Made by a program: the position numbers and the translations under genes
Shown: positions 3,232 to 62,773 of the stretch, piece after piece
How the letters are laid out: each line of letters begins with the position of its first letter
Numbering within the stretch: position 1 is the stretch's first letter
Notes under the pieces: model-generated
The model's database searches: none
Seen by the model: only the letters and a program-made list of their open reading frames with translations
What the model was told of the DNA's origin: nothing
NCBI GenBank assembly: GCA_002269645.1
Contig: NIVC01003372.1
Location: 1-64,000, forward strand
Reading direction: 5' to 3'
Length of the DNA: 64,000 nucleotides
From: Macrostomum lignano
Lineage: Eukaryota

Positions 3232-4113
3232 ATGCCACCGAAACGCGGAAATATTTCCCGTTCTACACGCGCTGCATCGGCAGCCAAGAAGCGCAGGGCG
3301 TCGGAGACACCCGACGAGCGCCATCATCGTCTTGAAGCAAATCGACTGCGCACAGCTGAATGCCGTGAAGCCGAGGACGAGGCGGTCCATCTGCATCGCC
3401 TGGAGGCGCAGCGGCAGCGCCAGAGTCAGCATCGCGCGGCTGAGTCTGCTGACGACTGCGAAGGCCGTCTACACGCACAGGTAGATTGGCGTGGAGATAG
3501 CTAAAAGGGGTTCTTATATTTTATTCTGCTATTCAAACAGACATTTCGTCATTTCGTCAAATGGTAGATAAAACAGAGCCCATTTCTGTTTTAAATTTAA
3601 GTTAAAAAAATTTTCTCATTAAGTAATATAATGTCCTGCTAAGTTAGGATAAATATATTTAAGATGGACTTTACAACTATTTGCTTAAGCGATGGGTTTC
3701 TAAGAAAAGAAGAATGGGTTTGCTTTGAAAGAAGTTTTTAAAAATTAAAATGTTTTTCTTAGTAACACTTCACTTTAAAAAACCATTATACCTACCTTCC
3801 ATGCACACATCTCTATTCTCTTTACCACACTTTTTGACGAAATGACAAACATGACTATTTAAAAGGGTATTTGACGAAATTTCCGGTCACCTTATGTGCG
3901 GCTGCTCATTCTTGGAGACTATTAAACTTTCTGCATGTAGATCTGGATTTTCAAGGATAAGTCCTGATAAAAATGCTCTTTTTTCATTGCCACAGGCTGC
4001 TGGATCTGGCACACCAGCCACATGTGCTCGGTCGCATGGACCGCCAATGTCCGCACTGAAGGGCGCTACGCTGGAAGGACGAGCCAGCTAGCATTTGCTG
4101 CCGTGCTGGAAAG
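3232..4113 (+). mobile_element. Helitron RepHel 5' remnant (STPR repeats + zinc-finger exon), pseudogenised
   Basis: 3232-3480 reads MPPKRG followed by 23-aa repeats (ETPDERHHRLEANRLRTAECREA / EDEAVHLHRLEAQRQRQSQHRAA), with a GT donor at 3481. The exon at 3996-4113 (cacag|...aag|gtgagt) reads LGRMDRQCPH*RALRWKDEPASICCRAGK, the CPHC.AL.W..E....CC..GK motif of Helitron RepHel N-termini, with TGA at 4057-4059 in place of Cys. No Rep or helicase sequence follows. Confidence 0.75.
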
Positions 4114-4566: not shown

Positions 4567-4850
4567 GTGAGGGGTTGAGAAAGTTTTCTTGGAAATGGGT
4601 TGATTGAAATTAGTTGCTGACACCAATGAAGTGGGGCGAATTCCACGTTTGAATTGCCGCCGGCGTTGAGTTCACACGAATAATCCGGAAATCGCGCAGA
4701 CGAATCACAACGAAATCCTTTCTCCTGTTTTACTCCAAATGCCGGGTTCTCTAGTCTGGGGGGGAGGGTAGTCGTAATCGTAGCGGAGCAGTCGTGTAGC
4801 GGCGCGGTCGTTCAAATGATGAGACACCGTAAATTTGCTGAGCTTGTTAC
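4567..4850. repeat. Conserved structured core, copy A (truncated)
   Basis: Shares ttgccgccggcgttgagttc..ccggaaatcgcgcagacgaatcacaacg and gagggtagtcgtaatcgtagcggag..gttca..gacaccgtaaa with copies B-G. Similarity stops at ~4850. Confidence 0.85.
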
Positions 4851-5858
4851 CCGTAACGCAAAATTTCGTATCGATACGTATCGGAGACGACCCCCTGAAT
4901 TCCCAAAGTCTCGTCCCAGGGATAGTACTTTTGATAGTTGTAGATACGTATCCGATATGTAATTTTGAGACGTCCTAGGGACGGTCCCAGGTGACTTCTA
5001 TGAGACCTTAATAATGACAATCCACCACAGGCATATTGCTCTTACTTTTTGCACTTTTGAGTTTTGCAATCACGTGACCTGGCTGCTTGACTGAAATGTC
5101 AGACTTTTTTGACAGTTTTGGGGAACTGATACGTTGACAAATAACAAAGGCGAAAGTGAAAAATTAGCAACTGAGAATTTTCACTGAGCAATGCAATTTC
5201 TTTTCTCTTTAAAGAGACGTAGCAAAAAGGTTTTATTGGCCGACCAAGTCGGACTACGTCGGCGAATAAAACGTCAAGCCTGACGGGCAAGCCGGGGGAG
5301 TTATTAGTCGCTCTCTACGTCTGCGTCGTCGTCGATCTGTCTGTCACATTTCGATTTCCGCATCATTCGTTTTAGAATGCTGCCGATAAAAGAACGGGCA
5401 CCGACGCATCCTAACTGACGTCGCAGTGATTTTGAGTCCAGCACGATTCATGAAAAGTTGGATTTTAGATTTTGCCACAACTATACGTCTTTATTTAAAA
5501 AATAAATAACGCAAATTAAGAGACTCACCGATTGCACAGTCGGCCACTGGCGCAGGTAGTTTTTGCTCCCCCCCCCTCTTCGACCTTCCATATTGTATTG
5601 GCACAAAACGGAAGGTTTTGCTGTCAATATCAGCATTTTCAGCATTAGTTTGACAGCATTTTCTGCCCGACTAGCACAATACTTCCTCTACAAGAAGGGT
5701 TACGGCAAATAATTAGTGATTGGTAACAACAGCAAAGCTCCAATTGAGTAACTCACATAATTATTGCCATTTGGGAATTCAGAAGAAAGATATTAGGATA
5801 TGCAAAAATGTTTTCCACAAAATTTAAAGCATTTTATTGAACTATAAAGTTCAAGATT

Positions 5859-7053
5859 GTTTGTTTGTTAAACAAAAGGGTCCTAAGGGGGACCCGCGGA
5901 TCAGCCACATGGAAGGGCTCTGCCGCGACAGGCACTGCCAGGGGCACAGCATTAGCTGTTTTTAGAGCCCGATATACCCCGATTGGGATGGAGATTGGGC
6001 CCGGCATAAAGCACGGGAGGCGAAGTGGACCTAAACCTACGGTACAAGACACCGCCAAACCAACAGTGGAATCAGGGACGGTGCTAAGACCGAGTCCACC
6101 CAGGCCACCCCCCCCCCCAGCAGACAGGTCCTCGGGAGTGCGCGAAAAACAGAATTGGATATACTACTTAAAGCCGTCCAAGAGCGGGGAAACCCAGAAG
6201 TCTTGGAAAGGAGCCGTCCAAGAGCGGGGAAACCCAGAAGTCTTGGAAAGGGCTAACTATTGGAGCGAGTCTGGGAGGCTTGTATCCGAGGGCGAGTCTC
6301 CTATCAAGAGGTAAACCAGAAAACCCTCCTATAGGGCTGCAAGCCACAAGGGCATCGCCTATCCAGCTCATTATTGGGGGGCAGGCCAAGGGGTCGAGAA
6401 GAGGCACCAGGGGCAAGAGGACACCAGACTCAGCCGGTTGTCCCCGGTACGGGACGAACATCCTTCCCAGGACACCAATCCACTGTCAGGATGAGAGCCA
6501 GAGACACGCAAGCAGGGACCGTCAGCAGGAGCCAGTAGATGGACCCAAAAACAGAGCAGGGTGGACCGGGCAGTGGCAGAGCTCATTACTCCGAGAGATT
6601 GGACGGCTACATAGGCCGGGATTTGATAAAACCAATACTGTAATGGGACTAAAACATAACTGGAGGAGCACCTGAAACCACACAGGCCCCCTCAACCTGT
6701 TACCCGGGGCTCAGCCTCAGGGCTGGCAGTCTACTGGGCCTACCGTGCACCTTTGTGAATCGGTCATTTTCTTTCCTGCAGGGCGGGTACGACCGGGGGG
6801 CTCAGTCCCGTCCTAGCCACACTGCAGTCCAGAGTACCTACTCACTCTGGGCACCCCCCCTTAAACCAAGGCCGAGGGCCGAAATTCTATTGGTTAGAAA
6901 AGATAGGGTATATTTTTGAACAGGCACAGCCCCTCCGGGGCGGACCCTTAGTTATTGGGCTAGCCGAAGCCAGGCCAATCGGATTGCGCGCAACCCTTAG
7001 ACAAGCTACCAGAGAGGCAACCAGGGTAAAAACAGTCAGAGACCGTCTTTACG
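5859..7053 (-). mobile_element. 1.2-kb non-coding retroposon with SL-like 5' head, 3' stem-loop and (AAAC)n tail
   Basis: Exact 12-bp TSD AAGTTCAAGATT at 5847-5858 and 7054-7065. The minus-strand 3' end is gggtcc-ccctta-ggaccc followed by ttttgtttaacaaacaaac. The minus-strand 5' end is CGTAAAGACGGTCTCTGACTG. There is an internal 40-bp tandem duplication at 6172-6251 and no recognisable ORF. Confidence 0.8.
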
Positions 7054-8147
7054 AAGTTCAAGATTACCGTAAAATGTATTGTGCATAAATTATAAAATGA
7101 TAAGGGCTACAGGCCTAGTCTGTTTTTATAAATTTGCTTAACTAGCTATTACTATTATTACCTCATTCACAAATATGATTTAACATTTGTGACTAAAGAA
7201 TGTACACTGAAGATACTAAACTAAAGTCATATTATACTGGATAGAATAATCCGCATAACTGTGGCTTCTAATTGATATTGATATGAATATGAATCTGAAT
7301 CAGAGAGTCTGTACGACATACATACGACCGACCCACACGACGTTACAAAAATCAGGGACGGCAAAAATCAGAGAAGGGACGAATTCAGTCCATGGACGGG
7401 AAGAGGAATAGAACTAGCGATGGACGAGAGAAATAAAAAAATCAGCGGATGGGGAACTTTTTAAAAAATTATTTTCGCATGCAGTTATTGTTATAAAGTT
7501 CAGATTTCAACCGTGGCATCCCGCCTGCCACCAATACGTACCTTTTACTTCAACTTGATAAGTTACTGTGACGTTACCAAAAACGTAGCTTTTAAATACT
7601 AAAAAATGTCTGTTTTAAAGTATTAAAATGACTGAATTTGTTTGGCACCATAATAAAAAGTAATTTTAAGTACCTTTTAAACACGAAAAACATATCTGTT
7701 CGTTCGATTTTATTGAAACGTATTTGAGACCTATCTGATGCGTCCGATTGTTATTCGGGTTCAAAGCGAGGGACGGAAACCATGTATAGTTTGATCATAA
7801 GTTTGATTATTTGCATGGGTCTGGGGGCGCAACGAGAGGCAGACGAGAGCTCGCTTTTGATCATCAAAGGTTTGGGCGCCATTGCTACTGGTGTTTCAGT
7901 GTGCGCATTATGTCTCCTTCTTATATTAAATGTGCATGTGCAGTGTCATTCTTCGTTTTATGCGAAATTTTTTCACACATTTACCTACATTATTTTTGTT
8001 TGCTCTGTTTCCTGCATGCTCATTTGCATTTTTACATCTCACACAACCTCATTTTTCTCAATGTGAGAAATATTTCGCATAAAACGAATTTAACTATTTT
8101 AGTTAAGCCAGTAGATTTTTAGTAATTATTAGAGATTTAGTATATTG

Positions 8148-9371
8148 TGTGATGCCTGCGCTTCCTACTCTTTGATGACTACTGCTGCTGCCTACTAGCA
8201 CACTCTGTCTGTCCTCAACAACTAGCACGGCAGGTAGCTGGCCTGAGTGGTCTATCACTATGGTCCGAGAACCCTTAGTCTCTATTAAGTTACAATCAGA
8301 TATTAAACCGAGTTGGTAGTTGGGTTGCTGCCACCTTGTAGGTCTACAGGTAATATCCTTGACAGGCTGTCCCTAGGTAGGCCTACTGTTAAGTAGAGAA
8401 TGAATAAGACAAGACAAAGTCAGTTAACGTTTATTAATGTGAATAACGGTCACAGGCCGATCCTAAAATATCGTTTAATTGCTCAACTGGTGTCGCAGTA
8501 ACAATCCGTAAGCCTATGAGGTGTCGCTGATGTTGCCCAACAGCGTAGGATGTAGGCCACGAGACCAGGTCCAGACGGTGTTGAAGGTCTGGCGAGCTGA
8601 AGACACAAAAGGCCTGCGGCAGTCTTAACGAGCAATGGCAGCTGCAACAAATGTTTGCTTGCTGGTTATCCCTAGGAAAAGCGTCTAGCGAATTTGCCTA
8701 AGCTAGTTAGTCTAGGAAAAGCATATAGGAATACTAGCTCTTGCTCGAAGCCAAGCAGGCAGTCTCCGAACGAGGATCGGAAGACGAGGATCCGAAGATC
8801 GAGAGCGAGATGGTCTCTTTTGGGCCTTCACCTACTCTGTATTTATACTAAAATCTGGGGGTCTCAGGGCCAATGGGAAGCTCAGAGGCAGTTCCGTGGC
8901 AGATTCCATGGCAGTTCCGTGGACTACCCGGAGCCAGGAACGATCTTGGAGATGTCCATAAGACATCTGCCTCATCACGAGGCCTCCGCATGGCCTACTG
9001 GTACACTGCTTGCATGTTGCAGCATGCAAGGAGTGCAACAAGACCCCACGAGAGCCTACCCCGGGCGGAGAGCTATGCTCTCGTTCCCGCTGACTAACTA
9101 AGACTACTAGGGAGAAATATCCCACTGACTAATGTTTCTATTTTTAGCCCATTGCAGACTGCGCTAGGGGGAGAGGGGGAGAGAGTTTCTCTCCCTGTCC
9201 CGCGACAGCTGCACACCTGAGCCTGCACAAGGGAAGAGGAGGAAGGGACGGGAGCGCTGCAAGCGCACAGGCCCTATGCCCAGCTCCCACTGCTACAGCC
9301 CAAGCACTAAATGACTGTGGCTAAGAGGGGATCCCAGGAGCAGCCTATGCTAGCAATGCTGGATCACCACA
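8148..9371 (-). mobile_element. Solo LTR (~1.22 kb), probably Ty3/Gypsy-type
   Basis: TGTG...CACA termini with an imperfect inverted repeat (tgtgatgcc / ggatcaccaca). 4-bp TSD ATTG at 8144-8147 and 9372-9375. Minus-strand TATAAATA at ~8839-8846 and AATAAA at 8430-8435 are in U3-R-U5 order. Confidence 0.65.
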
Positions 9372-9693
9372 ATTGTACGGTCATATTCAATTTTGTCTAA
9401 TTTTTCAAAAAAATCGAATTTATTGAATTAATTGAAATCATTTTCAATTCTTTCAATTTAATTTGATTAAAATTTATAATAAGTAAACTAATTAAAATAA
9501 AATCAAGAAAGTTATAGTTTTCTGCAAATCAAATATTTATTTTACTAGTGTCCAAATTCCTCTATAAAAGAGTAGTTAGTCGATATGAAATCTATAATGT
9601 GCATTTTTTGTTGTTTAAGGATAGTTCTTGATTTATTCTATTACTATTTACATTTTATTCAATTGTATTCAATGTAAAAATGAAGAATTCTAT

Positions 9694-9953
9694 GGGCCTT
9701 TTCATATTGCTTGCTCTGGTTCCAGAACCAGAATCAATTTGTGAAGTATAACTTTTTGTCTCCATAACTAGAGGGAGATACGTGCTATAAAGTTTTTATT
9801 ATTGAATGACAATCACCAAGAAGAAAGTGAAAAATTGTGCTAAGTTAGGTTGTTAAGGCAGTCAAATATTAACAGAGTTTAAGAGTTATACTGCTGTTTT
9901 TCTTGGAATTCCGAACCGATTCTGGTTCTGGAATTGGTAATATGAAAAGGCCC
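9694..9953. mobile_element. MITE, PIF/Harbinger (Tourist)-like
   Basis: Imperfect ~40-bp TIRs: gggccttttcatatt..tccagaaccagaatc and gattctggttctggaa..aatatgaaaaggccc. The 3-bp flank TAT is present on both sides. GGGCC termini with a 3-bp AT-rich TSD are typical of PIF/Harbinger. Confidence 0.6.
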
Positions 9954-10465
9954 TATTTTCAACGTAAAAATTAACATTCTTAATTGGTCGAATCACCTTG
10001 ACTTTCAAAAGATATGTACTGTAAACTGTATTTCTAAATTCAACCTTTTAAGACGTAAGACTTCTAAATTCACTGATTAAGTTAAACAGATCGAAATCCT
10101 TTCGAGTGCATGCTAAATAATTTCGCACTGATTTCTTGCACACGATAAATTATGTTTGGGATTAAGAGCAGAGAAACAAAATATTGTGCTCAAAAACATT
10201 TCCTTTGTCGATTTCTTGTTCTTTTATTTTTGCGAAAGAAATGAAACTGCGTATTTTAAATAAAAAATTTAGTAAAAATCCATTTTTTCTAAAATATTTT
10301 GTCGTTGTCTTCCGTAACAAAGATTAACAAATAGATTGATTTCTTCTCATACTTAAGTTTTCTTGTGGTTTTAGTAGCAGATTCTTATAGAAATTGTCAA
10401 AATAAATTTTTTTGTACGATCATTGGTCCATGTACAAACTTTTTTTCAATAACAAAAAGTTGTGT

Positions 10466-10900
10466 GAGGTGGGGGTGGAGAAGAAATTTGTTGGGCGGCG
10501 TTTGAATTCGGCGGTTTGAATTGTTGGTCGACACCAGTGAGGTGGGGCGGATTCTACGTTTGAATTTCCGCCAGTGTTGTCTCGGCACTCGTTAACCCGG
10601 AAAATTTCACGAATGATGTGTGGATTCTTCTCCTTGGATACTTCGTCTGCCGGGGTCCTCAATTCCGGGGGGAGGGTAGCCGTAATCGTATTCGAGCGGT
10701 CTTGTAGCGGCCCGGTCGTTCAGAATGGGTCCTCAGACACCGTAAAATTCGTAAACTGTCGAAATGCTGTTTTGTTACTGTCAGTAGTAAAGTAGCGCTG
10801 CCACCACCGTAATTTCGTATTACGGAACGATAAGGGTCTCAGAGCTTTCTTTGAGTTGAGACTGATTGGTTATTTTACGCCCCGCGGGCAAATGACTCAA
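10466..10900. repeat. Conserved structured core, copy B
   Basis: Runs gaggtgggggtggagaag ... gccggggtcctcaattccgggggagggtag ... gtagcgctgccaccaccgtaatttcgtattacggaacg ... ttttacgccccgcgggcaaatgactcaa. Confidence 0.9.
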
Positions 10901-11966
10901 TAGAGACTGGGGCTTCGATTAAGAACAACTGAATAAGCAATTATTATTATTGTGAACTAAATATTATCGCTATTATTAAAGTAATAGATAAATTGTTATT
11001 ACTATTGTTGTTAACTATTAAAAGAAAAACCTCGAGAGATGGATTCGGCCGTGCCGAGGGCGAGCTAATAAATTACAAGCGCTTAGTCGAGAAGGCTGTT
11101 CTAGTTAAACGCAAATTAAATATTAACAGCAGACTCGTCAAGTCAGTATTCAAAAGTCAGAGAACAAAAGTAAAGTAAAGAGCAAAGCGAGCAAAGCGCA
11201 TGAGCAAAAGGTTCCAACAACAACGTTGTAAATATTAATTTTGCAAGGATAACCCAGGGGTTAGGACAAAGGATGGGACAAGGGAAAGGACAACGAAGGA
11301 AAATGGGAAAAACTTCAAAGCACTAAAACAACAGAGGCCACGGGAGGGAACAGCGAAAGGAGCAGACGAAGGAGCAAGGGCGGGGACAACCGGGGGAACA
11401 AACATGGGAACAAACATTGAAAGCATGACGTCAACCGTCATCCGATGGAGTCTAGCTGGTCGTCCCGCCGTTGTCCGCGCTGGAGGCCTGCCGTCGTTCA
11501 CCCCAGTGGTAGACCGGCCTAGCACATGTGACCTAGCTTTGAGAACGACCCTACGTCGAATCGTCTAAACTTCTATTTCGAAAATTTCTCCAAATACATT
11601 GCCCTATAATATATTGGCCTAACAGGCTAATTGCCTGAGCCAAATTCTTACTACTACAGGCAGTGGGAAGGAAGTTTACATTAAGAGTAAAAATTTCGAT
11701 GACGTCAGGATGGCGCAAATGCAAATACCGAGTTAGTAATTCCGCACAGTGACATACATCGGGTGGAGCGGAGTCCGGCGGACAAGTAGCGGCCTCGCCT
11801 GCCACACTCTCCTGCTAATATTTCAAAGGCTCGTTTGCCCCCTGCATATGCCACTATGTGACGCGACCCTTCTTTGTTCGGTGCTGACGGCTATGCACTA
11901 TCAATAATAAATTGAGTCTTCGTAACAAGAGAGTCTTATGTTTGAACTTTGACTGATTGTATTTAA

Positions 11967-14183
11967 TATAGCATTTTGCAGCCCATTTGGGCTAACGCGC
12001 TTTTAATTTAATCCAAGATACGTTTGCCAATGTAACAGAGCTTTTGTCTATGGTAGCAAGGCTGGCGCAGTGGCATTTAATTTGGTTCAAAAAGCATCCA
12101 TTTGGTCCAAACACTCGTGAGCCATTTGACAAACTCTTGCCTTCTCTCAACCGTCTGCAGGTTGTTGCGCACCGCTGGAATGTCAGCGTCTCTACCAAAA
12201 ATTTTAAGTTGCTTTGTAGAATTTTCTTTAATTGTTTATTGAATAAGAGCAAGGCGGTGGTTCATTTAGTTATTTACCAACGGAACTTAGATCAAAGAGA
12301 AAACAAGGGGAGAGCGAGTGATTTGTTTCACTGCCGCCGCCGTGTATTTATAGCTTTGTTATTGTCTTCCGGAAATTTCTAGAAAGATTTAGCTAATTTT
12401 AACAAAGCGAAATAACCCTTTAATTATATACATTACGTAAATATAATTAGAACATTAATACTTAAGTGATAATTAATTATTTACTATTTATATGCGTATG
12501 TTATAGATTAGCTGCTAACTCAAAGAAGTTTCTGGAAATAGTTTTTGACTTTTAGAAATCTGAAGAAATTTCGGGAAAGTCATTAAAGTACGCTACAACA
12601 GTTCCCCCCACGGGAGACGGAGTCCCTAAGTATGACGGTTAATTAATGTTAATTAGATGCTGGGTTACCGTGAATAAAGTCCAGGTTGAAATTACGCTGC
12701 TGAAAATTAATACAGATGACGACTGGGTTCACCGCGAGACGGATAGGGGCAGCTGGGCTCGCACTGCGGTCGAGGAGTTCAGACTGATTGTACATTATGG
12801 CGGTTAACAAGTCCGTGGTCTCTGCGGCACTGCTCCAGGATGGCGGTTTGTCGCTGTAGTTTGGAACGACCTGCGGGTTATTGCCGGTTTGCAGACAGAC
12901 GACTCCCGAACTACGGATAGGCGCCAGGGATCAAGGCGGGTAGTCGCTCTGCGGCTGAAACAGAACCGAGAAGATTCATGGGTGTCGTCCGGGTTAGGCC
13001 AGCTGGTTGACCACCGGCTTATCGAGGAACCTCGTAGTAGGTTGCAATGTGTAGACTCGCCAGTGGTGCCAGCCGGTTTATTGTGGATTGCTAATTGAGT
13101 TCTTCGCGATGGATGAGACCCAGTGCTAACGTCGCGTCTGCGCGGTGCTGCGGTTGATGTCGCTGGTACGTATACGTGGAGGTCATACATGTAGCTGCGC
13201 GGATGGCTCGATCGGATGGCCGTTCGTGAGCCCGTGTAGGCGTAGTTTATTTGGTCACCGACGAGATACCGTGTCGTTTTTAGATGTGGGAACAGGGAGG
13301 TTGGCGACGGTTTAGCTAAATTTATATTACATGACGGCGACGGGAGACACGCTGAGAAGTGATGACGCTGGGCAGTAGACAGTGGTGTGCTATGTTTCGG
13401 CGTTGGTAGCGACGGCGGTGCTGATCGCGAATGATGGCATGATGAGCGGTCACGGGCGTGCGTATGCACACGCATTCTGAAAGAGATCGCTCGACGCCTC
13501 ACCGGACCATTGTAGAATTTCTTTAATTGATTATTGAATAAGAGCAAGGCGGTGGTTCATTTAGTTATTTACCAACGGAACTTAGATCAAAGAGAAAACA
13601 AGGGGAGAGCGAGTGATTTGTTTCACTGCCGCCGCCGTGTATTTATAGCTTTGTTATTGTCTTCCGGAAATTTCTAGAAAGATTTAGCTAATTTTAACAA
13701 AGCGAAATAACCCTTTAATTATATACATTACGTAAATATAATTAGAACATTAATACTTAAGTGATAATTAATTATTTACTATTTATATGCGTATGTTATA
13801 GATTAGCTGCTAACTCAAAGAAGTTTCTGGAAATAGTTTTTGACTTTTAGAAATCTGAAGAAATTTCGGGAAAGTCATTAAAGTACGCTACAGCTTTTCC
13901 AGAGCTCTGCTGATAGTCGAAATCTGATAACCTCCTTCGTGTTCACCTCCGTCGAGTGCTTCGATCACAAGCCAATGACATTCGTTCAACAGCCTAGCAT
14001 ATGGTCCACAATTCTGGGACTAAGCTGCAAATGAACTAAATGGACCAAATTGGTGCTTGTTGGACCAAATTAAATGCCGCTGTGCCAGCCTTGCTACCAT
14101 AGACAAAAGCTCCATTACTTTGACAAACATATCTTGGATTAAATTCAATGCGCGTAAGCCCAAATGGGCTGCAAAAAGCTATA
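11967..14183. mobile_element. Element bounded by ~143-bp inverted repeats (MITE/foldback-like), interrupted by an LTR element
   Basis: 11967-12109 is the reverse complement of 14041-14183 at roughly 85% identity by eye (gcagcccatttgggct..cttttgtctatggtagcaaggctgg..catttaatttgg). The element is about 0.53 kb once the nested LTR element is removed. Confidence 0.55.
12215..13892 (-). mobile_element. Young non-autonomous LTR retroelement (TRIM-like), 1.68 kb
   Basis: LTRs at 12215-12597 and 13511-13892 have TGTAG...CTACA ends and differ by only about two changes near one end. 4-bp TSD GCTT at 12211-12214 and 13893-13896. On the minus strand there is a putative PBS TGGTCCGGTGAGG 1 nt inside the 5' LTR, a PPT GGGGGGAA at 12602-12609, TATAAATA in both LTRs and an intact AATAAA in the 3' LTR (12235-12240). 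No gag/pol is recognisable in the 913-bp interior. Confidence 0.88.
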
Positions 14184-14529
14184 GTATTATTTATTTGAAC
14201 AGACCGGATAACCTATTGCCGTTAAATTATTGGTGGTAAGCTATAGCGAACAGGCACCAGGCGGCGGACCAACCAAAAAGCACGCACGAGGCCCAAGAAA
14301 ATTGAGCGCAAAATCGCGATTTAACCGTCTTTTAAATATAACAATACTCGTATGTCTATGAAGGACACAGTAAAACAAATTTTAAGCGTACAATATTGAA
14401 TACTTTAAAATTCGCTTATGAATAGTAAATAAATTAATATAATACTAAAGAGACATATTTAATATCAAATTATTTTTAAAAATTAAATATCAACATCGTT
14501 ACAACTAGGTCCGATTTAGTGATATATAT

Positions 14530-14968
14530 GAGGTGGGGGCGGAGAAAAAAGGGGGGGTGTTGAAAAAAAATTGGAAACTTTGGCGGTGAATTTGGCTGGT
14601 TTGCTGACACAAATGAATTGGGTGATATTAACTTTGAACTGCCGCCGACGTTGAATTCGCACGAATTAAATCCGGAAATATCGCGCAGACGAATCTCAAC
14701 GAAATTTTCTCCTGATACTCCGACTGCCGGGGTCCTCAATTCCGGGGGGAGGGTAGTTTCGGTCGTAGACGAGCGGTTTTTGTTAGGCGCGAGCGTTCAG
14801 AGAGGGTCCTCAGACACCGTAGTTAATGCGCTTCGATTGCTTGACTGATTACTGTTAGTAGAGTAGCGCTGCCACCACCGTAATTTACGTATTACGGAAC
14901 GTTGAAGTCTCAGAGCTTTCTTTGAGATGAGATTGGGTTATTTTACGCCCCACGGGCAAATGACTTAA
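14530..14968. repeat. Conserved structured core, copy C
   Basis: Same ordered motif series as copy B. Confidence 0.9.
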
Positions 14969-15552
14969 AATAGGCTATGGCTTTTGATCCAGAACGTAGA
15001 AGACAAATTATAATTGTTGCTTATTTATTAATCGGTAAACAAAGTTATTATAAACAAGTTATTGTATTCACACTCGAGCAGCGACTAACGATTCAAATGA
15101 CTGGGGTGCCGCGGTGCGGGCTCTCACTTAAACTAAACTTAAGTAACTGTCCGGTTGAGCAAAATTAATAAAAGTTAATTTAACGTTGATTAGCAGAATA
15201 GGGGGGGTCAGAAAGGGAGAAAGGGATCGGAAGGAAAGAAAGGCATGGAAAAGCAGAAGTCTAGGGGAGAGACAGGCGCAAGGGGCGGGGTTAAATACCC
15301 CAAAACGAAGGACACAAGGTGGTCGACATAGCCCAGAAAATGGGGAAGGCGAAAAACTAGAGTCCAGAAAGAGGTAACAAAAAAATACCGCAGAAAATAC
15401 ACAGAAAAACAAAATAACCATAAATTGGGCATACAAAGCCAGAAAATGGGGCGGGGAGAACAGAAAGAGGGCAGAAAACGTCATATATGCGCCAGGGGGT
15501 GGACAAATGGGGGCCAGAAAGGGGCGAGCTTAATTTTAATGTCCAGATAATT

Positions 15553-15978
15553 GAGGTGGGGGTGGAGAAGAATTTTCTTGGAATGGGCGGCTTTGAAAAT
15601 TTGCTGACACCAGTGAGGTGGGGCGGATTCCCGTTTGGATTGCCGCCGGCGTTGAGTTCGCACGAATAAAGCCGGAAAATCGCGCAGACGAATCACAACG
15701 AATTTCTTCTCCTTTTACTCCGACAGCCGGGTCCTCAGGTCCGGGGGAGGGTAGTCGTAATCGTAGCGGAGCGGTCGTATAGCGGCCCGGTCGTTCAGAT
15801 TTGTAGACTCAATGGTCTAGACACCGTAAATCTGTTTCTGAGTTGTTGAGCTGATTACTATCAGTATAGTAGCGCTGCCACCACCGTAATTTCGTATTAC
15901 GGAACGTTGAGACCTCAAAGCTCGTTCGGAGATGAAATGAGTTTGGTTGTTTAACGCCCCACGGGCAAATAACTCAAG
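15553..15978. repeat. Conserved structured core, copy D
   Basis: Same ordered motif series, 1023 bp after the start of C. Confidence 0.9.
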
Positions 15979-16631
15979 ATAAACTGTCAAGGGCTTCGAT
16001 AAATGAACAACTAGTAAATTATTATTAATAATTATTGTTAATTGCGCAAGCGGTAGTTATTAGAGATTAATATTAATTTCACGAGATGTCCACGGCCGGT
16101 GCCGGGTGCCGAACGACTAACTATTAAGCGAAACTATTAAAACTTACTTAGCGGAGGCAAAAACTATAAACACTAAACAGAAACTGTATAAACTCAAACA
16201 CTAATGAACGAGCACAAACCACGGAGTTTACACGAAGAAGAACGACGAATACGGAAAAAAACGCGCGCGCGCGAAAAAACCAAAAGGCGGCCCGAAATGG
16301 CCTTATAAAAGGGGAAACAATGTCGTCCGGACAGGGATGGGGCAACAGATGGGGCAGGAAGGCGAAGGATGGGGCAGACGATGGGGCAGCGGACGACACT
16401 AAAGCCGCAAACGGGAATTAACAAAAAAATTGAGCAACGGCAAAAGATGGGGCGAGGGATCGGGCGAGGGATCGGGCAAGGGACGGCGCACCGAGTGACG
16501 GAAAAACAGAGAGTCATGAGCAAGTGTCACCACACGGCGCCATCACGTTCGTCGGTCAGTGGTAGATCGCCCTACCACATAATGTTATTGTTATTAAAAT
16601 CAATTTTTGAAAAATAATCAGTGGTGATACT

Positions 16632-17041
16632 GAGGTGGGGGTGGAGAAGAATGAAAAAATTTGAAAGTTGGTGGGTTTGAAATGTTGGGTTTCTTCGAAA
16701 ACCCGAACGGCATTGAGTTCGCACGAATTAACTCCGGAAAATCGCGCAGACGAATCTCAACGAATTTCTTCTCCTTTTACTCCGACTGCCGGGTTCTCAA
16801 GTCCGGGGGAGGGTAGTCGTAATCGTAGCGGAGCGGTCGTGTAGCGGCGCGGTCGTTCAAAGCGATGAAACACCGGAGGTTGTTGACACCGTAAATTAAT
16901 GTGTCGATTTGCTGAGCTTGTTGCTTTCAATAGGGTAGTTGCTGCCACCACCGTAATTTACGTATTACGGAACGAGTAAGTCTCAGAGCTTTCTTTGAGA
17001 TGAGAACTTGGTTATTTTACGCCCCACGGGCAATGACTCAA
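16632..17041. repeat. Conserved structured core, copy E
   Basis: Same ordered motif series, 1079 bp after the start of D. Confidence 0.9.
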
Positions 17042-17602
17042 GAGAGACTAAGGCTTAAAGTTAACGGAAAAATAAATAGAATTATTAAGTTGCAGTTTAC
17101 TTCGGTTATTATTATTGTTAAATTTGCAGGCTGAATAACTGACGAGGTTTCTCCACGGGTGCCGGAGGCACAGGCTATTAAAAGAAAAACTGTAACTTGG
17201 CGACTAAACTACTCACGCACCAATGAATTTTAACTATTCACGCAAAATAACTATTAAACGCAAGGCTGTTAAGACGGAGGATCAAGCTAAGAGAATAATA
17301 GTAAAAGCGGAAAAGGGAGGGAAGAAGAAGGGGAAAGAGGAAAGGCATGCAAAAAAACGCGCTGAGCACAATGTTTAAGTAGTACGTTGAGAAGGGCAGC
17401 GAGAGGAGAAAAGGTGACAAGGGCAGGACACCGGGCATGGACCAGACAGAAAAGCACAGGGACAAATGGGGAGAAAACGCAAAAACATCGACAAGACAAA
17501 CAGGGCCAAGGACAGGAGAGGGAGAACTCACACCGGAGGTTGGAAGAAATGACGACAAAAATCCCGGGTTTGGAGGGGGGCGGGTAAAATCCCGGGGATG
17601 TT

Positions 17603-18009
17603 GAGGTGGGGGTGGAGAAGATAAAACAAAATTTGATATTGGAGGTCGGCCGGTAATTCTTCGAAACCGGTAGCGTTGCGTTCGCACGAATAAAAACCGG
17701 AAAATCGCGCAGACGAATCACAACGAAATTCTTCCCCTTTTACTCCGACTGCCGGGTTCTCAAGTCCGGGGAGAGGGTAGTTGTAATCGTAGCGGAGCGG
17801 TCGTAGAGCGGCACGGTCGTTCAGTTGTAGGAACTCCGGAGTTTCTGCCTCCGTGAATTAATGCGTCGAAGTGTTGAACTCGTTACTTTTAGTAGGGTAG
17901 TTGCTGCCACCACCGTAATTTACGTATTACGGAACGTTTAATGGTCTCAGAGCTTTCTTTAAGTTGAGACTGATTGGTTATTTTACGCCCCACGGGCAAA
18001 GGATTCAAG
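17603..18009. repeat. Conserved structured core, copy F
   Basis: Same ordered motif series, 971 bp after the start of E. Confidence 0.9.
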
Positions 18010-18606
18010 ATAGGCTATGGCTTATATTAACTGGATAGGTATTAACTGATTAATTGACCGTCTGTTTATTATTAACGCAAAGAAAGTTACTAATTCAAGC
18101 AGGTTATTATTGTTAAGAAAAATTAAGCTACAGACGAAAATGAGTTCGTGGACGCCGGTGCGCTAATAAACTAAGGATGAATTAAACTGTAACTGAAACA
18201 CACGAAAACACAAGCGCGAGCGAGAACAATGGAAACTAAAACAAAAATGGAAGACGAAAAACGGGGGAAGGTAAAGATTAAGAAATTCAACCGAAAACAC
18301 ACTTATTTATACAATGAAATTATTAAATTCCCAGGTGTGGGGCCACGACTTATCAACACCGGGGCCACACACGGGTCCACACTCAGGTTATAAAACAAAA
18401 GCCGCAAAAATACACACAAAATTATTAAAACTCAACCAATGAAAATTATATTGACCAACTAAGGAAAAATCTATAACAACCAATGGTCCAAACACGGGGC
18501 CAACCGGGGGGAAAAGGGTGAGGTCACCGTCTGCCGTTGGCCGCAAGGGTTGGAAACTTACGAAAAGATGGCACGCAATTAAAAATAGAAAAATTATTAA
18601 AATATT

Positions 18607-19036
18607 GAGGTGGGGGCGATTTAGATTTGCGGGTGGTCGTTGGGAGAATATCTGTCCGGTGTTCGTCTGTTTGGAAGTCGAGTGTTTGCGGCTCAGGCCT
18701 TCGAATTGGCGCCGTCGTTATCTCGCACGAATTGAATCCGGAAAATTGGTGAACGAATCCCAATAGAACGACTTGTAGTTGCTCCGTCTGCCGGGGTCCT
18801 CAATCCCGGGGGGGGGGGTAGTTTAGTCGTAGGCGAGCGGTCTGTGCTTGGCGCGAGCGTTCAGATGCGGGTCCTCAGACACCGTAAACTCAATGTACCT
18901 CGTATTCTTGTTGTGTTACTAACAGTAGAGTAGCGCTGCCACCACCGTAATTTGCGTATTTCGGAACGTTGATAGTCTCAGAGCTTGCTTCGAGATGAGA
19001 CTGGGTTATTTTACGCCCCACGGGCAAATGACTCAA
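18607..19036. repeat. Conserved structured core, copy G
   Basis: Same ordered motif series, 1004 bp after the start of F. The left half is more diverged. Confidence 0.9.
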
Positions 19037-20685
19037 GATAAGCTATGGTCTTGATTAATTAACGATAATTAATTGGCTTATTAAGTAATTGAAACGGATG
19101 ACAACTAACTAAATTATTATTATTTTATTTAAACGACGATTGATGAAGGCAGGTGGTGCCGCGAGAGCGATTACAAATAATCAGTTATTAATGAGATTAG
19201 TTACTATCAATATAGGCTAAAGAGTATAAGGTTGATAAAGCAGATTGAACTCGGATTAAAACAGTAACTAAACGGAGTAAAACAAAAACGGAGTAACAAA
19301 CAGGAGTGAAATTCTAGCACCCCCCTGCGCAATATTTATAGTATTTTAATGGTACATAATCTTGGCATTAACGAACAGAAAAAGAGAAACTTTAAATTTC
19401 ACTGGACCATGAGGTCATAAATATGTACCAAAGAAAAATTACATTGGGAAAATGGGCAAAAATTAAAGAGCACAAAAAAGGGCACAAAGGCCAGAACCAG
19501 GGGACCCAGGGCCAGAACCGGGGAGCGGGAGATGACGGAAGGGGTGACGTAGGGCAGCACCATAAGGTGGACATAGGAGGGCCAGACCCGGAACACGACA
19601 AAATTACGACCAGAAACGGGGAAGATTACATTTTCAAAAGTTCAAGTGGGAGGCTCACCCTACCACAATATTATTAAATGGTGGCAACCCCACTGCCACA
19701 ATGTTACGTAAATTTCAGTTAATGTTTTCCACCGATCAGTGGCATCCCACTGCCACAATACCATCTACCACCGCATATAATTAATAATAATGTATAATTA
19801 TTTAAATAGGGCCTACCTTGCTTTCAGACAATGTTTTCAATTAATCTCTTTTGAATAAATTAAACATAAAGGCTAAAGCATGAATTTGCATTGAATAGAG
19901 TTTTAAATACATAGACCTTGGCCCTAGGTCTAGTATCATTTCATTAAAGCAAATTATTATTAAATCATTAAAGCATTCCTTCTGGCCATAGACATCATTT
20001 TCTGGCGTGTCATCACATTGACTGATTGATGTACCATTTAAAACTCGAAAATAATATTGCAAAACAAACTGGAAGATCGCCAGAAAAAATTATATGGTTT
20101 ATATTAAATAGTAGATAATCATAATTTGTAGCAAAATAATAAATGTCTAGGATAGGAATAGCTAATTATATAAAAGCCTATTGTAAAATTATATTAATTA
20201 TAGTATTTGCTCTGGTAAATTAATGTAATGAAGATAAAGACTATTTGTTGTCTCTGTACGTTATCTCTACGTAATAATAATTTTGGTCACTCTTTCAAGT
20301 TTCAATGATATTGACTTCAAGACAAAATATTGAATGCTTTAATAATATTTTTGATACAGTATTTTCTAAAAGTAACATAAGCCTAGTGGTTTATTTATAT
20401 TTATTAGTAGGCCTAAAATAGAGTCAAATGCATTCAATTTATAAAATTAGAATATTTTGCTTTTTAAAAAACAAAAAAATTATACATTACTAATGCCTTG
20501 AAATAAGATAAATATAGGGCCTAGAATCAAATTGTTATTTTTTATTTCCTTATTATAAAATTGAAAGCTTTCTTTAAATGTACATATTTTCTTTTTGATT
20601 TAGAATTGAAGGTTGGTTGATTTTGTAACTAGATTAGCTAAGTGCTTGTATATAAAAATATTAATATGTATTTCTATTTCCATAT

Positions 20686-21470: not shown

Positions 21471-21712
21471 ATATGCATATTTTATATTGAATATAGACAT
21501 TATAACATTGAAACTAGCTAGGAAGTTTTATTAACTACATTGCCATAGTCTGGACTATTTGGATTTTTGGCTATACAATATGAAAAACCCTTTTTTTAAA
21601 GTCAACTATAAATTTCCTTAATTTATAATTATTTAAAATGTTAATTTTATTTGAAAACCAGTGTTTAAATGTTTAAATTCATATTGCAGCTATTGCTAGC
21701 TGGGGTGCATAT

Positions 21713-24700
21713 ATGCTAGACCTGCTAGAGCGGCTGCTGGTTCACGGTGACTTGTCAGTTGGCAGTCAGCTGTTCAGCTTAGACAATGAGACTGTCCTCA
21801 GCGAGGCTGATGAAGCTCTGGCTTATGTGCGATTGCAGTGTCTCAATGGTACATTGGCAAGCAATGGTGGCTGCAGTCAGGGGCAGAACCTGGCCCTGAC
21901 ACCTGGTCAAGTGAGCCCTTTAATTCATTAGTATGATTCCTCCTTGTGACTGTATTCCTCTGGATGCATTGATCTCAACCCCTCATTCTCCCTCTTCAGT
22001 CCAGCGCTGTGGAACTTTGCGTTGCAAGAATCTGTCGCTCATTGAAAGAGACTGGCAAACTGGAGGCTCACCTGCCTGCCCTGCTCAAACTGCTGGCCAG
22101 ATGTGCCGAATTGCCATTGGCTGGTAATGTGTCAGGCTCTGATGGCTGCGGAAGCGACCCTCTACCAGTAAGACTGGCCAGCGATCTGCTGTCCTGTCTG
22201 TTCCAGGTAACTGCAATGCTGATAGTCACCTCTAGTGATCCTTGACCCCTTCCCCATCCTGCAGATCCGTCACTGATTCTCTTTTCCCACCCTGCAGATC
22301 CCTCACTGATTCTCTTTTCCCACCCTGCAGATCCCTCACTGATTCTCTTTTCCCACCCTGCAGATCCCTCACTGATTCTCTTTTCCCACCCTGCAGATCC
22401 CTCACCGATTCTCTTTTCGCACCCTGCAGATCCCTCACTGATTCTCTTTTCCCACCCTGCAGATCCCTCACTGATTCTCTTTTCCCACCCTGCAGATCCC
22501 TCACTGATTCTCTTTTCCCATCCTGCAGATCCGTCACTGATTCTCTTTTCCCACCCTGCAGATCCCTCACTGATTCTCTTTTCCCACCCTGCAGATCCCT
22601 CACTGATTCTCTTTTCCCACCCTGCAGATCCCTCACTGATTCTCTTTTCGCACCCTGCAGATCCCTCACTGATTCTCTTTTCGCACCCTGCAGATCCCTC
22701 ACTGATTCTCTTTTCGCACCCTGCAGATCCCTCACTGATTCTCTTTTCCCACCCTGCAGATCCCTCACTGATTCTCTTTTCCCACCCTGCAGATCCCTCA
22801 CTGATTCTCTTTTCGCACCCTGCAGATCCCTCACTGATTCTCTTTTCGCACCCTGCAGATCCCTCACTGATTCTCTTTTCCCACCCTGCAGATCCCTCAC
22901 TGATTCTCTTTTCCCATCCTGCAGATCCGTCACTGATTCTCTTTTCCCACCCTGCAGATCCCTCACTGATTCTCTTTTCGCACCCTGCAGATCCCTCACT
23001 GATTCTCTTTTCCCACCCTGCAGATCCCTCACTGATTCTCTTTTCGCACCCTGCAGATCCCTCACTGATTCTCTTTTCGCACCCTGCAGATCCCTCACTG
23101 ATTCTCTTTTCGCACCCTGCAGATCCCTCACTGATTCTCTTTTCCCACCCTGCAGATCCCTCACTGATTCTCTTTTCCCACCCTGCAGATCCCTCACTGA
23201 TTCTCTTTTCGCACCCTGCAGATCCCTCACTGATTCTCTTTTCCCACCCTGCAGATCCCTCACTGATTCTCTTTTCCCACCCTGCAGATCCCTCACTGAT
23301 TCTCTTTTCCCATCCTGCAGATCCGTCACTGATTCTCTTTTCCCACCCTGCAGATCCCTCACTGATTCTCTTTTCGCACCCTGCAGATCCCTCACTGAGT
23401 CCCCCCATCCTGCAGATCCCTCACTGAGTCTCCCCATCCTGCAGATCCCTCACTGAGTCCCCCCATCCTGCAGATCCCTCACTGAGTCTCCCCATCCTGC
23501 AGATCCCTCACTAAGTCTCCCCATCCTGCAGATCCCTCACTGAGTCCCCCCATCCTGCAGATCCCTCACTGAGTCCCCCCATCCTGCAGATCCCTCACTG
23601 AGTCTCCCCATCCTGCAGATCCCTCACTAAGTCTCCCCATCCTGCAGATCCCTCACTGAGTCCCCTTCCAGATCCAGCGGGTCTCCCCGACCCCAATCAA
23701 AGCAGAATGCTGTCCAACTCTTCCCTTACCAAACCGCAGGCGCGGCACAGCAGCTCCATGCTGTCCTCATCTCTGCCTGTGCTGGTGAAGCTGCTCAACT
23801 GTCCTAACTCATCTTTACGGCGCACAGTGAGCAGCTACCTCAGCCTGGCCAGCGCTGGCCGAGCACAGCTTCTGACCAGCCATGCTACACCTCTAATTAT
23901 TGCCGCCTGCGAAGGCAACCTGAGCTTAGTTGGCCTGCTGTGCCAGCTGCAGCAGCACTCGCCAGACGCATTTGCTAAGCATTCCGACGATTTGATTTTG
24001 TTGCTTAGGTGCGGACTGGTCTAATTATTCTGAAAACCTTGATTGTTGATGCATTTTTCCATTTTTCTAACAGAATTCTCATGCTCCGTTGCCGGGGCCC
24101 CTATTTTTAAACAGAATAGCCCCGTACTTTTTATATTTTAAGGATTGCCGCTCTTACACCCTATTAAGGATTGCCCCATTCCTACCCCCTTTCTAAGAAT
24201 ATCTATTCTTTCCTTTCTAAGAATCACTCTTTACCCTTTCTAAGAACTGCTAATCTTTTCCTTTTCCAAGAAACGATATTGTTTACTCTGTTTCAAGAAT
24301 CGCTATTCTTTCGCTTTTCCAAGAATCGCGCTTTTTCTCTTTTCACCCAATCTTATTTTTCCCCTTTTCTAGGCCTATTCTTTCCCTTTTTCCAAGAATC
24401 GCTATTCCTTTCCTTCCAGGAATCTATTCTTCCCCTTTTTCCAAAAATCGCTATTCTTCCCCTTTCTAAGAATCGCTATTCTTCCCCCTTTCTAAGAATC
24501 GCTATTCTTCCCCTTTCTAAGAATCGCTATTCTTCCCCCTTTCTAAGAATCGCTATTCTTCCCCCTTTCTAAGAATCGCTATTCTTCCCCTTTTCTAAGA
24601 ATCGCTCTTCTTTCCCTTTTTCCAAAAATCGCTATTCTTCCCCTTTCTAAGAATCGCTATTCTTCCCCCTTTCTAAGAATCGCTATTCTTCCCCTTTCTA

Positions 24701-57595: not shown

Positions 57596-62017
<4,422 letters not shown>

Positions 62018-62477: not shown

Positions 62478-62523
62478 TCTTAGTGTCTGTCTGTCTGTCT
62501 GTCTGTCTGTGTGTCTGTCTGTG

Positions 62524-62558
<35 letters not shown>

Positions 62559-62607
62559 GTGTCTGTCTGTCTGTCTGTCTGTGTGTCTGTCTGTCTGTCT
62601 GTGTGTG

Positions 62608-62682
<75 letters not shown>

Positions 62683-62773
62683 GTGTCTGTCTGTGTGTCT
62701 GTCTGTCTGTCTTTCTGTCTGTCTGTCTGTCTTTCTATGTGTCTGTCTGTCTGTCTGTCTGTCTATCTGTCTA

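What the first reader, a model, noticed from the sequence alone, without database searches (positions are those of the whole stretch)
4567..19780. Array of seven non-coding, multi-hairpin ~430-bp cores separated by unique spacers: candidate unknown ncRNA family or cis-acting cassette system
Seen: cores at 4567 (truncated), 10466, 14530, 15553, 16632, 17603 and 18607, with C-G spaced 971-1079 bp. Motif order is fixed, and blocks such as gtagcgctgccaccaccgtaattt(a)cgtattacggaacg and ttttacgcccc(a/g)cgggcaaa are nearly invariant. The ~550-650-bp spacers cannot be aligned base-by-base but keep a common layout (AT-rich, GTGCCG motif, A-rich, purine-rich microrepeats). Variation falls in loops: CCGTAAT-(ttcgt/ttacgt)-ATTACGG, GCCC-(cac/cgc)-GGGC, GTCTCA..TGAGAC, and GTTGA(G/A)TTCG..CGAAT(C)TCAAC. 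No ORF is shared and I see no match to rRNA, tRNA, spliceosomal snRNA, SRP or RNase P. Inference: island-like conservation among otherwise saturated paralogs points to selection on structure or on binding sites rather than neutral satellite turnover. Possible models are tandem structured RNA genes with their own promoters (TGACTCA, CCAAT and CACCC/GC-box motifs are present), recombination or replication sites delimiting variable cassettes, or termini of a mobile element.
Basis: partly seen in the sequence, partly recalled or inferred. Interest (0 to 1): 0.82.

Follow-up and report, generated by a model that had tools for sequence, protein, structure and literature searches.

The report
Nested solo LTRs of a flatworm retrotransposon
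The seven "non-coding cores" are leftover ends (solo LTRs) of one retrotransposon family in the flatworm Macrostomum lignano; five of them jumped into one another and so mimic a 1-kb tandem array, which makes this ordinary mobile-element debris rather than a new RNA gene family.

Summary
A profile of the core finds exactly seven copies, all on the + strand, at the stated coordinates. The interpretation as an ncRNA family or cassette array does not hold.

- **Element ends:** each complete unit is a 1.02-1.08-kb element that starts TG, ends CA and has imperfect inverted termini.
- **Target-site duplications (TSDs):** each of the six complete units has a perfect 4-bp TSD: B TGTG, C TATA, D TAAT, E ATAC, F ATGT, G ATAT.
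- **Nesting:** units C-G are not tandem. C contains D and E, E contains F, and F contains G. The four right-hand ends pile up at 19640-19775.
- **Link to a retrotransposon:** the translated minus strand of the core occurs twice in an M. lignano UniProt gene model. The two occurrences flank a protease and an integrase, as an LTR pair would.
- **No RNA-gene support:** Rfam finds nothing, the cores fold no better than shuffled sequence, and covariation is weak.
- **Why the core is conserved:** it is the gag-proximal ~430 bp of the LTR. It was kept similar among active retrotransposon lineages while the rest of the LTR diverged before insertion. The intact TSDs show the copies have decayed little in place.

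One curiosity remains. All four nested insertions hit the last 14-61 bp of the host LTR, in the same orientation.

The parts
4568..4851 (-). Solo LTR A, gag-proximal conserved part (the 'truncated core'). It starts TGAGGGG and breaks off at profile position ~320.
   Evidence: nhmmer hit at 4571-4851. It is 85% identical to copy D.
4852..7059 (.). About 2.2 kb of unrelated sequence interrupting LTR A. Its identity was not determined.
   Evidence: There is no similarity to the other LTR copies. Read directly.
7060..7533 (-). Probable remainder of LTR A: an AT-rich stretch, a purine-rich stretch and the family's terminal hairpin GTGGCA..TGCCAC, ending CCA. The boundary is uncertain and there is no clean TSD (CACG upstream, ATAC/TACG downstream).
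   Evidence: The terminal hairpin motif occurs only at unit ends in the window. There is a weak match to the end of F. TSD check.
10465..11526 (-). Solo LTR B, 1062 bp, TG...CA, flanked by the TSD TGTG (10461-10464 and 11527-11530).
14529..15551 (-). Solo LTR C, left piece. C is the outermost element of the nest. Its other pieces are 16584-16630 and 19762-19775, giving a reconstructed length of 1084 bp. TSD TATA (14525-14528 and 19776-19779).
15552..16579 (-). Solo LTR D, 1028 bp, inserted into C 61 bp from C's right end. TSD TAAT (15548-15551 and 16580-16583).
16584..16630 (-). Middle piece of LTR C, lying between the D and E insertions.
   Evidence: Joining this piece to 19762-19775 restores the family's terminal hairpin GTGGTGATAC/CATCTACCAC.
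16631..17601 (-). Solo LTR E, left piece. The right piece is 19705-19757, giving 1024 bp. E is inserted into C 14 bp from C's right end. TSD ATAC (16627-16630 and 19758-19761).
17602..18605 (-). Solo LTR F, left piece. The right piece is 19672-19700, giving 1033 bp. F is inserted into E 53 bp from E's right end. TSD ATGT (17598-17601 and 19701-19704).
   Evidence: The end was corrected to 19700 by reading the output.
18606..19667 (-). Solo LTR G, 1062 bp, the innermost element. It is inserted into F 29 bp from F's right end. TSD ATAT (18602-18605 and 19668-19671).
19668..19779 (-). Pile-up of the right-hand ends of F, E and C with their TSD copies. It holds successive terminal hairpins, each ending ..CCACA.

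Best explanation
The seven units are solo LTRs of one family of LTR retrotransposons, probably of the Ty3/mdg4 (gypsy) type, in the Macrostomum lignano genome. The element's sense strand is the window's minus strand.

**How each copy arose.** Each copy came from a separate integrase-mediated insertion that duplicated 4 bp of target (shown). The loss of the internal gag-pol region by recombination between the two LTRs is inferred.

**How the apparent array arose.** Five copies arrived one inside another. D and E inserted into C, F into E, and G into F. Each time the insertion fell within the last 14-61 bp of the resident LTR on the + strand and in the same orientation. The left ends therefore sit about 1 kb apart, like a tandem array, while the right ends stack up at 19640-19775 (shown).

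**What the core and spacer are.** The 430-bp core is the end of the LTR that lies next to gag in a full element. I infer that it holds the promoter-proximal, R and U5 parts. Those parts must keep working for transcription, strand transfer and integration, so they stayed 75-90% alike among active lineages. The "spacer" is the rest of the LTR (U3). It evolves quickly and is full of slippage-prone purine/pyrimidine microrepeats (inferred).

**When the copies diverged.** The TSDs are all intact, so the copies have changed little since insertion. Their differences therefore arose between master lineages before insertion (inferred).
For: **Termini.** All six complete units begin TGAGGTGGGGG and end ..CCACA or ..CCGCA. 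The two ends are 8/10 inverse-complementary.

**TSDs.** All six have a perfect 4-bp TSD. For C, E, F and G the only properly nested pairing of four starts with four ends gives four matches out of four. A 4-bp match has a chance of about 0.006 per element at this base composition.

**Lengths.** Reconstructed lengths are 1024-1084 bp.

**Independent flanks.** Copies A, B and C have unrelated upstream flanks but the same start point.

**Link to gag-pol.** The translated minus strand of core F hits M. lignano protein UniRef100_A0A1I8GNL1 at two places. The 30-aa stretch FTVSRPIESTDLNDRAAIRPLDYDYNYPPP is identical at both. The two places flank Asp_protease (residues 647-739) and Integrase_H2C2 (residues 1250-1307). 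Copy D matches the first site at 91% over 32 aa.

**Species.** The window is M. lignano: the WAPL exons are 100% identical to P0001. M. lignano has 137 described LTR-retrotransposon families, mostly Ty3/mdg4 (PMC12801592).

**Divergence pattern.** Identity drops sharply from 75-95% to about 50% at the edge of the core. None of the 24 TSD base pairs differs. In-place decay therefore cannot explain the unalignable spacers.

**No RNA-gene support.**
Against: - No full-length element, primer-binding site or polypurine tract could be examined. The window has no gag-pol, and no DNA of other M. lignano loci could be fetched.
- The link to gag-pol rests on one chimeric gene model, seen only as protein.
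- No conserved TATA box or poly(A) signal was found in the sense orientation, so the U3/R/U5 assignment is inference.
- Copy A has no clean TSD.
- Seven of seven copies being solo, with the same orientation, within 15 kb is unusual.
Confidence: 0.87

Rival explanations
1. The units are non-autonomous cut-and-paste DNA transposons (MITE-like). An example would be a family moved by an integrase-like transposase, such as Ginger, which also gives TG..CA-like ends and 4-bp duplications. On this reading the retrotransposon in the UniProt model merely sits between two such copies.
For: The units have short inverted termini, 4-bp TSDs and no coding capacity, and all copies in the window are solitary.
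Against: The two core peptides that flank the protease and integrase in A0A1I8GNL1 are identical over 30 aa. That fits an LTR pair. Neighbouring independent copies in this window differ by about 20%. The inverted termini are only about 10 bp and imperfect, which is typical of LTR ends. From memory, Ginger-type elements have longer terminal inverted repeats.
Confidence: 0.07
2. The cores are genes for a new structured non-coding RNA, or host cis-regulatory modules, kept by host-level selection. The mobile-element features would be incidental, or the LTRs would have been co-opted.
For: Local hairpins are preserved: 93.7% of cells pair. Seven pairs show a change on both sides, against 2.6 +/- 1.3 in shuffles. 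Some hairpins differ in sequence but keep a stem at the same place in different copies: TAGAC..GTCTA in D, GGAACTCC/GGAGTTTC in F, GGGTTT..AAACCC in E and CCGGT..ACCGG in F (read).
Against: There is no Rfam match even at E<=5. Whole-core folding energy equals that of shuffles, with z from -2.7 to +0.2 on the + strand. The RNAalifold covariation term is +0.58. The structure tested was derived from the same six sequences, so that test is circular. Hairpins are expected anyway in a retrotransposon's LTR and leader. The copies were inserted one by one as mobile DNA.
Confidence: 0.04
3. The region is a macrosatellite. A ~1-kb unit was tandemly duplicated, and gene conversion then homogenised only the cores.
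For: Start-to-start spacing is a regular 971-1079 bp, all units have the same orientation, and copy B is a mosaic of the two core subtypes.
Against: Tandem duplication does not give each unit its own distinct 4-bp flanking duplication. It also does not stack the right-hand ends of four units together at one end of the block. Copies A and B lie outside the block, with unrelated flanks and the same precise termini.
Confidence: 0.02

Closest known systems
Solo LTRs of Ty3/mdg4 (gypsy) LTR retrotransposons, such as Drosophila gypsy/mdg4
   Same: TG..CA ends, short imperfect inverted termini, a length of about 1 kb and a 4-bp target-site duplication. Five of the six TSDs alternate purine and pyrimidine (TATA, ATAC, ATGT, ATAT, TGTG). 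From memory, this matches the YRYRYR target preference and 4-bp duplication reported for Drosophila gypsy. The linked polyprotein has an aspartic protease and an H2C2 integrase.
   Different: The superfamily was not established by phylogeny, because reverse transcriptase is missing from the only protein model seen. It is unknown which of the 137 catalogued M. lignano families this is, if any.
Clusters of nested solo LTRs at preferred integration sites: yeast Ty1 delta and Ty3 sigma elements upstream of tRNA genes, and fission-yeast Tf LTR clusters at promoters
   Same: Repeated integration into the same ~100-bp window, followed by loss of the internal regions, leaves piles of solo LTRs.
   Different: No tRNA or other known RNA polymerase III gene is present in the window. 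The target here seems to be the start of a resident LTR of the same family, or an unknown feature just to the right of 19775. All insertions share one orientation.
Helitron/Helentron non-autonomous elements (HINEs, DINE-1)
   Same: The layout is similar: a conserved left part, then microrepeats, then a terminal stem-loop (PMC4067079, PMC7492417). A decayed Helitron fragment lies next to copy A, and the window is rich in minisatellites and (GTCT)n.
   Different: Rolling-circle elements make no target-site duplication and insert between A and T or within TT. These units have 4-bp TSDs of varied sequence, have TG..CA ends, and flank gag-pol. This reading was rejected.
Tandemly repeated small-RNA genes (spliced-leader RNA, snRNA, 5S arrays)
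   Same: About 1-kb periodicity, with a conserved block plus a variable spacer.
   Different: There is no Rfam match and no excess folding stability. The units are individually inserted and nested, not tandem.

Membership tests
LTR of an LTR retrotransposon (solo LTR) | Terminal dinucleotides 5'-TG...CA-3' | tested here: met
   All six complete copies start TG and end CA. Copy A starts TG.
LTR of an LTR retrotransposon (solo LTR) | Short, imperfect terminal inverted repeat | tested here: met
   TGAGGTGGGG against the reverse complement of the other end, TGTGGTAGGG, matches 8/10.
LTR of an LTR retrotransposon (solo LTR) | Target-site duplication of 4-6 bp directly flanking the element | tested here: met
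   Perfect 4-bp TSDs in 6 of 6 complete copies: TGTG, TATA, TAAT, ATAC, ATGT and ATAT. Copy A is inconclusive.
LTR of an LTR retrotransposon (solo LTR) | Two copies in direct orientation flanking a gag-pol internal region | tested here: inconclusive
   Seen only at protein level. The core peptide occurs twice in M. lignano model A0A1I8GNL1, around Asp_protease and Integrase_H2C2. The DNA of that locus could not be fetched.
LTR of an LTR retrotransposon (solo LTR) | Primer-binding site and polypurine tract adjoining the inner LTR edges | not testable with these tools
   The window holds no internal region of this element, and no M. lignano genome is searchable here.
LTR of an LTR retrotransposon (solo LTR) | U3-R-U5 organisation with promoter and poly(A) signal | tested here: inconclusive
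   No TATA box or AATAAA/ATTAAA signal is conserved across copies in the sense orientation. Transcript data are needed.
Ty3/mdg4 (gypsy) superfamily | Placement of reverse transcriptase or integrase in the superfamily tree, and domain order PR-RT-RH-INT | not tested
   Reverse transcriptase is absent from the only model available. Protease comes before integrase, and the H2C2 integrase and 4-bp TSD are compatible.
Structured non-coding RNA family | Match to a curated family | tested here: not met
   Rfam gave no hit, either at gathering score on the whole window or at E<=5 on 14400-19900.
Structured non-coding RNA family | Folding more stable than shuffled sequence | tested here: not met
   z = -0.32 for D and +0.41 for F. 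All six cores on both strands range from -2.7 to +1.9.
Structured non-coding RNA family | Compensatory base changes beyond phylogeny | tested here: inconclusive
   The RNAalifold covariation term is +0.58. Seven double changes against 2.6 in shuffles, but from six sequences and a structure derived from those same sequences.
Tandem repeat / macrosatellite | Head-to-tail units produced by duplication, with both ends of every unit abutting the next unit | tested here: not met
   The right-hand ends of C, E and F lie together at 19672-19775, and each element has its own TSD.
Helitron / Helentron non-autonomous element | No target-site duplication; insertion between A and T or within TT; 5'-TC and 3'-CTRR ends, or subterminal inverted repeats plus a 3' palindrome | tested here: not met
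   4-bp TSDs of varied sequence and TG..CA ends. Defining features taken from PMC4067079.

The most novel reading that the evidence does not exclude
This retrotransposon family may home to itself. Its integration machinery would be drawn to the first ~60 bp of a resident LTR of the same family, next to the conserved terminal hairpin GTGGYAG..CTRCCAC. It would insert there in a fixed orientation, so the family builds pseudo-tandem LTR stacks. This would be a self-targeting integration preference not described for flatworm LTR elements. The alternative is an unknown tethering feature in the AT-rich DNA just right of 19775.
Probability: 0.3. Interest if true: 0.45.

Novelty: new member of a known kind. 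Interest (0 to 1): 0.2.

Why it matters
It removes a false lead. A striking "array of conserved multi-hairpin cores" turns out to be a stack of solo LTRs, not a new RNA gene family or cassette system.

It is also a useful worked example. Nested insertion near one end of an LTR can imitate a tandem repeat with conserved cores and variable spacers. Pairing ends by their target-site duplications resolves such a case.

The residual value is modest. The four position- and orientation-specific nested insertions hint at targeted integration in a regeneration model organism whose genome is very repeat-rich. This could be tested genome-wide at low cost.

Tried and rejected
1. **Known RNA families.** Rfam at gathering score and at E<=5, and ARAGORN, found nothing.
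2. **Relatives elsewhere by DNA.** An exact 19-mer scan of the metagenome, prokaryote-genome and viral collections gave only chance seed-length hits.
3. **HINE/Helentron or Helitron-terminus model.** I pursued this for a long time. The reasons were the decayed Helitron fragment at 3232-4113, the layout of core, microrepeats and 3' stem-loop, and the (GTCT)n arrays. I rejected it once the TSDs and TG..CA ends were found.
4. **Taxon identification.** Two ORFs, one with a weak Vg_Tdu match and one PHD-like, found no homologues. Exact look-ups of window ORFs, P0001 and P0002 in the assemblies failed. The WAPL exons finally gave the species.
5. **Spacer homology.** Global alignment of spacers gave only weak residual similarity, with z from 0.7 to 8.3, and there is no alignable block.
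6. **Promoter and poly(A) motifs.** A search in the sense orientation found nothing conserved.
7. **Literature.** A string search for core motifs gave nothing. The M. lignano LTR paper has no supplements held as text.
Full report
**Observation**

The repeat is real. A direct-repeat scan, a multiple alignment and an nhmmer profile agree. They find seven copies of a ~430-bp block, all on the + strand: 4571-4851 (truncated), 10466, 14530, 15553, 16632, 17603 and 18607. There are no others in the 64 kb.

Cores are 73-87% identical in pairs. Along whole units, identity is 75-95% for the first ~450 bp and then falls abruptly to about 50%, the level an optimal alignment gives here once recognisable similarity is lost. 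The spacers keep only a common motif order: an AT-rich stretch, GTGCCG, an A-rich stretch and purine microrepeats. No ORF is shared.

**Context**

The window is eukaryotic.
- Two exons at 21689-21910 and 22000-22208 are 100% identical to a WAPL-domain protein of the flatworm Macrostomum lignano. The window is therefore M. lignano.
- From 22 kb to 64 kb the window is packed with about 30 different minisatellite arrays.
- A decayed Helitron N-terminal fragment lies at 3232-4113.
- An element with 146-bp inverted ends lies at 11964-14186.

**The RNA-gene reading fails its tests**

- Rfam finds nothing at gathering score on the whole window, and nothing at E<=5 on 14400-19900. There are no tRNAs.
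- Whole-core folding is no better than dinucleotide shuffles: z = -0.32 for D and +0.41 for F. All copies on both strands range from -2.7 to +1.9.
- RNAalifold gives a covariation term of +0.58.
- Counting pairs on that structure shows 93.7% of cells paired, mostly because the pairs never vary. There are 7 double changes against 2.6 +/- 1.3 in shuffles. This comes from six sequences and a structure derived from the same sequences, so I call it inconclusive.
- Local hairpins do exist, and some keep a stem with different sequence in different copies. That is also expected in a retroelement's LTR.

**The key lead**

I translated the minus strand of core F and searched the representative protein library. 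It hit one M. lignano protein at two places. The protein is UniRef100_A0A1I8GNL1, a 3732-aa chimeric gene model.

The 30-aa stretch FTVSRPIESTDLNDRAAIRPLDYDYNYPPP is identical at residues ~205-235 and ~1790-1820. Between the two places lie a gag-like region, Asp_protease (647-739) and Integrase_H2C2 (1250-1307). After the second place come a mariner fragment and a family-3 G-protein-coupled receptor (GPCR). Copy D matches the first site at 91% over 32 aa.

Two near-identical copies in direct orientation around gag-protease-integrase are what an LTR pair looks like. The element's sense strand corresponds to the window's minus strand.

**The decisive test inside the window**

If the units are LTRs, they should start TG, end CA and carry target-site duplications (TSDs). 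They do.

| Copy | Coordinates | TSD |
|---|---|---|
| B | 10465-11526 | TGTG |
| D | 15552-16579 | TAAT |
| G | 18606-19667 | ATAT |
| F | 17602-18605 + 19672-19700 | ATGT |
| E | 16631-17601 + 19705-19757 | ATAC |
| C | 14529-15551 + 16584-16630 + 19762-19775 | TATA |

The "three hairpins" at the end of unit G, plus one more, are the stacked right-hand ends of G, F, E and C. The only properly nested pairing of the four starts with the four ends gives four perfect TSDs out of four.

Joining C's pieces restores the family's terminal hairpin. Reconstructed lengths are 1024-1084 bp. The termini TGAGGTGGGG and TGTGGTAGGG (reverse complement of the other end) match 8/10.

The chance of a 4-bp match at this composition is about 0.006 per element. 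Six out of six is therefore decisive.

Copy A (4568-4851, plus probably 7060-7533) carries a 2.2-kb insertion and has no clean TSD. The window contains no gag-pol of this element, so all seven copies are solo LTRs.

**What this explains**

- The ~1-kb periodicity is the LTR length. Each newcomer entered 14-61 bp from the right end of its host.
- The sharp left boundary is the LTR terminus. It is shared by A, B and C despite unrelated flanks.
- The "core" is the gag-proximal ~430 bp of the LTR.
- The "spacer" is the remaining, fast-evolving part of the LTR.
- None of the 24 TSD base pairs differs, so decay in place is small. I estimate roughly 6% per copy or less at 95% confidence. The 13-27% core divergence and the unalignable spacers therefore arose between active lineages before insertion. 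This fits selection on LTR function within the retrotransposon family. The assignment of the core to promoter-proximal/R/U5 is inference; no conserved TATA or poly(A) signal was found.

**Residual curiosity**

All four nested insertions lie in the last 61 bp of an LTR of about 1050 bp, and all share the host's orientation. Only 4-9% of alternating purine/pyrimidine tetranucleotides lie in that stretch. Five of the six TSDs are such tetranucleotides. From memory, this resembles the YRYRYR target preference and 4-bp duplication of Drosophila gypsy.

Three explanations remain open:
- The family targets the start of its own LTR.
- An unknown feature in the AT-rich DNA right of 19775 attracts integration, as tRNA genes do for yeast Ty elements. 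No tRNA or other known RNA polymerase III gene is present.
- The shared orientation, antisense to the + strand WAPL gene, reflects selection against sense insertions within or near a gene.

**Comparison and verdict**

This is a new or uncatalogued member of a well-known kind: solo LTRs of a probably Ty3/mdg4-type element. M. lignano has 137 described families of LTR retrotransposons (PMC12801592).

The HINE/Helentron model that I first favoured is rejected, because rolling-circle elements make no TSD. The macrosatellite model is rejected by the nesting.

The headline interpretation is not. The third option offered, mobile-element termini, is correct.

Interest is low, apart from the possible targeted-integration behaviour.

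Noticed in passing
window 3232-3480 and 3995-4113 (+): Decayed N-terminal fragment of a Helitron Rep/helicase gene. It has an arginine/glutamate-rich first exon and then ...MDRQCPH*RALRWKDEPASICCRAGKV followed by GTGAGT. An in-frame TGA sits where the conserved cysteine of the CxxC motif is expected. The motif was identified from memory, not by a database hit. LTR copy A starts 450 bp downstream.
   Followed up: partly
window 22253-63997: An extraordinary density of about 30 different mini- and microsatellite arrays, with periods of 4-64 bp and lengths of 0.2-4.7 kb. Examples are a 4.7-kb 21-mer array at 51171-55886 and (GTCT)n arrays at 57850-59391 and 62484-63126. Several units share a GGGATC/GATCCC motif. 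The first array follows a WAPL exon directly and its unit carries CTGCAG, so these may be intronic.
   Followed up: no
window 21689-21910 and 22000-22208 (+): Two exons of a WAPL-domain gene, 100% identical to M. lignano UniRef A0A1I8J079. That model skips the last 28 codons of the first exon, so it uses an alternative or mis-called splice site. The LTR nest lies 1.9 kb upstream, antisense to this gene.
   Followed up: partly
window 11964-14186: An element with 146-bp inverted ends (11964-12109 against 14186-14041, 89% identical). It contains an internal 392-bp direct duplication (12214-12605 = 13510-13900, 98.7% identical) around a 250-aa ORF on the minus strand with no Pfam match. It is probably a DNA transposon, lying between LTR copies B and C.
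   Followed up: no
UniRef100_A0A1I8GNL1 (P0002), not in the window: This 3732-aa M. lignano "G_PROTEIN_RECEP_F3_4 domain-containing protein" is a chimeric gene model. It fuses LTR sequence, retrotransposon gag-protease-integrase (without reverse transcriptase), a mariner HTH fragment and a real family-3 GPCR.
   Followed up: partly
window 559-1304 (-): Two adjacent minus-strand ORFs: a PHD-like zinc-finger ORF (Pfam E = 1.5e-4, below the gathering score) and one with a CxxC...HxC pattern (YYRCTKR...HCHG...HTC). Neither has a homologue in the 5.8-billion-protein search. They may be part of another mobile element.
   Followed up: partly
window 7513-7531, 11506-11525, 16559-16578, 19646-19666, 19681-19699, 19739-19756: The terminal hairpin of the LTR keeps its stem through paired changes: GTGGTAG/CTACCAC in B and D, against GTGGCA/TGCCAC in A, E and F. 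All nested insertions lie within or just beside this hairpin. It may be the feature the integration machinery recognises.
   Followed up: partly
window 60364-61647 (+): A 427-aa ORF that begins inside a 33-bp minisatellite. It is rich in Gln and His and has a weak Vestigial/Tondu motif (E = 4e-4, below the Pfam cut-off). It has no homologues, so it may not be a real gene.
   Followed up: partly
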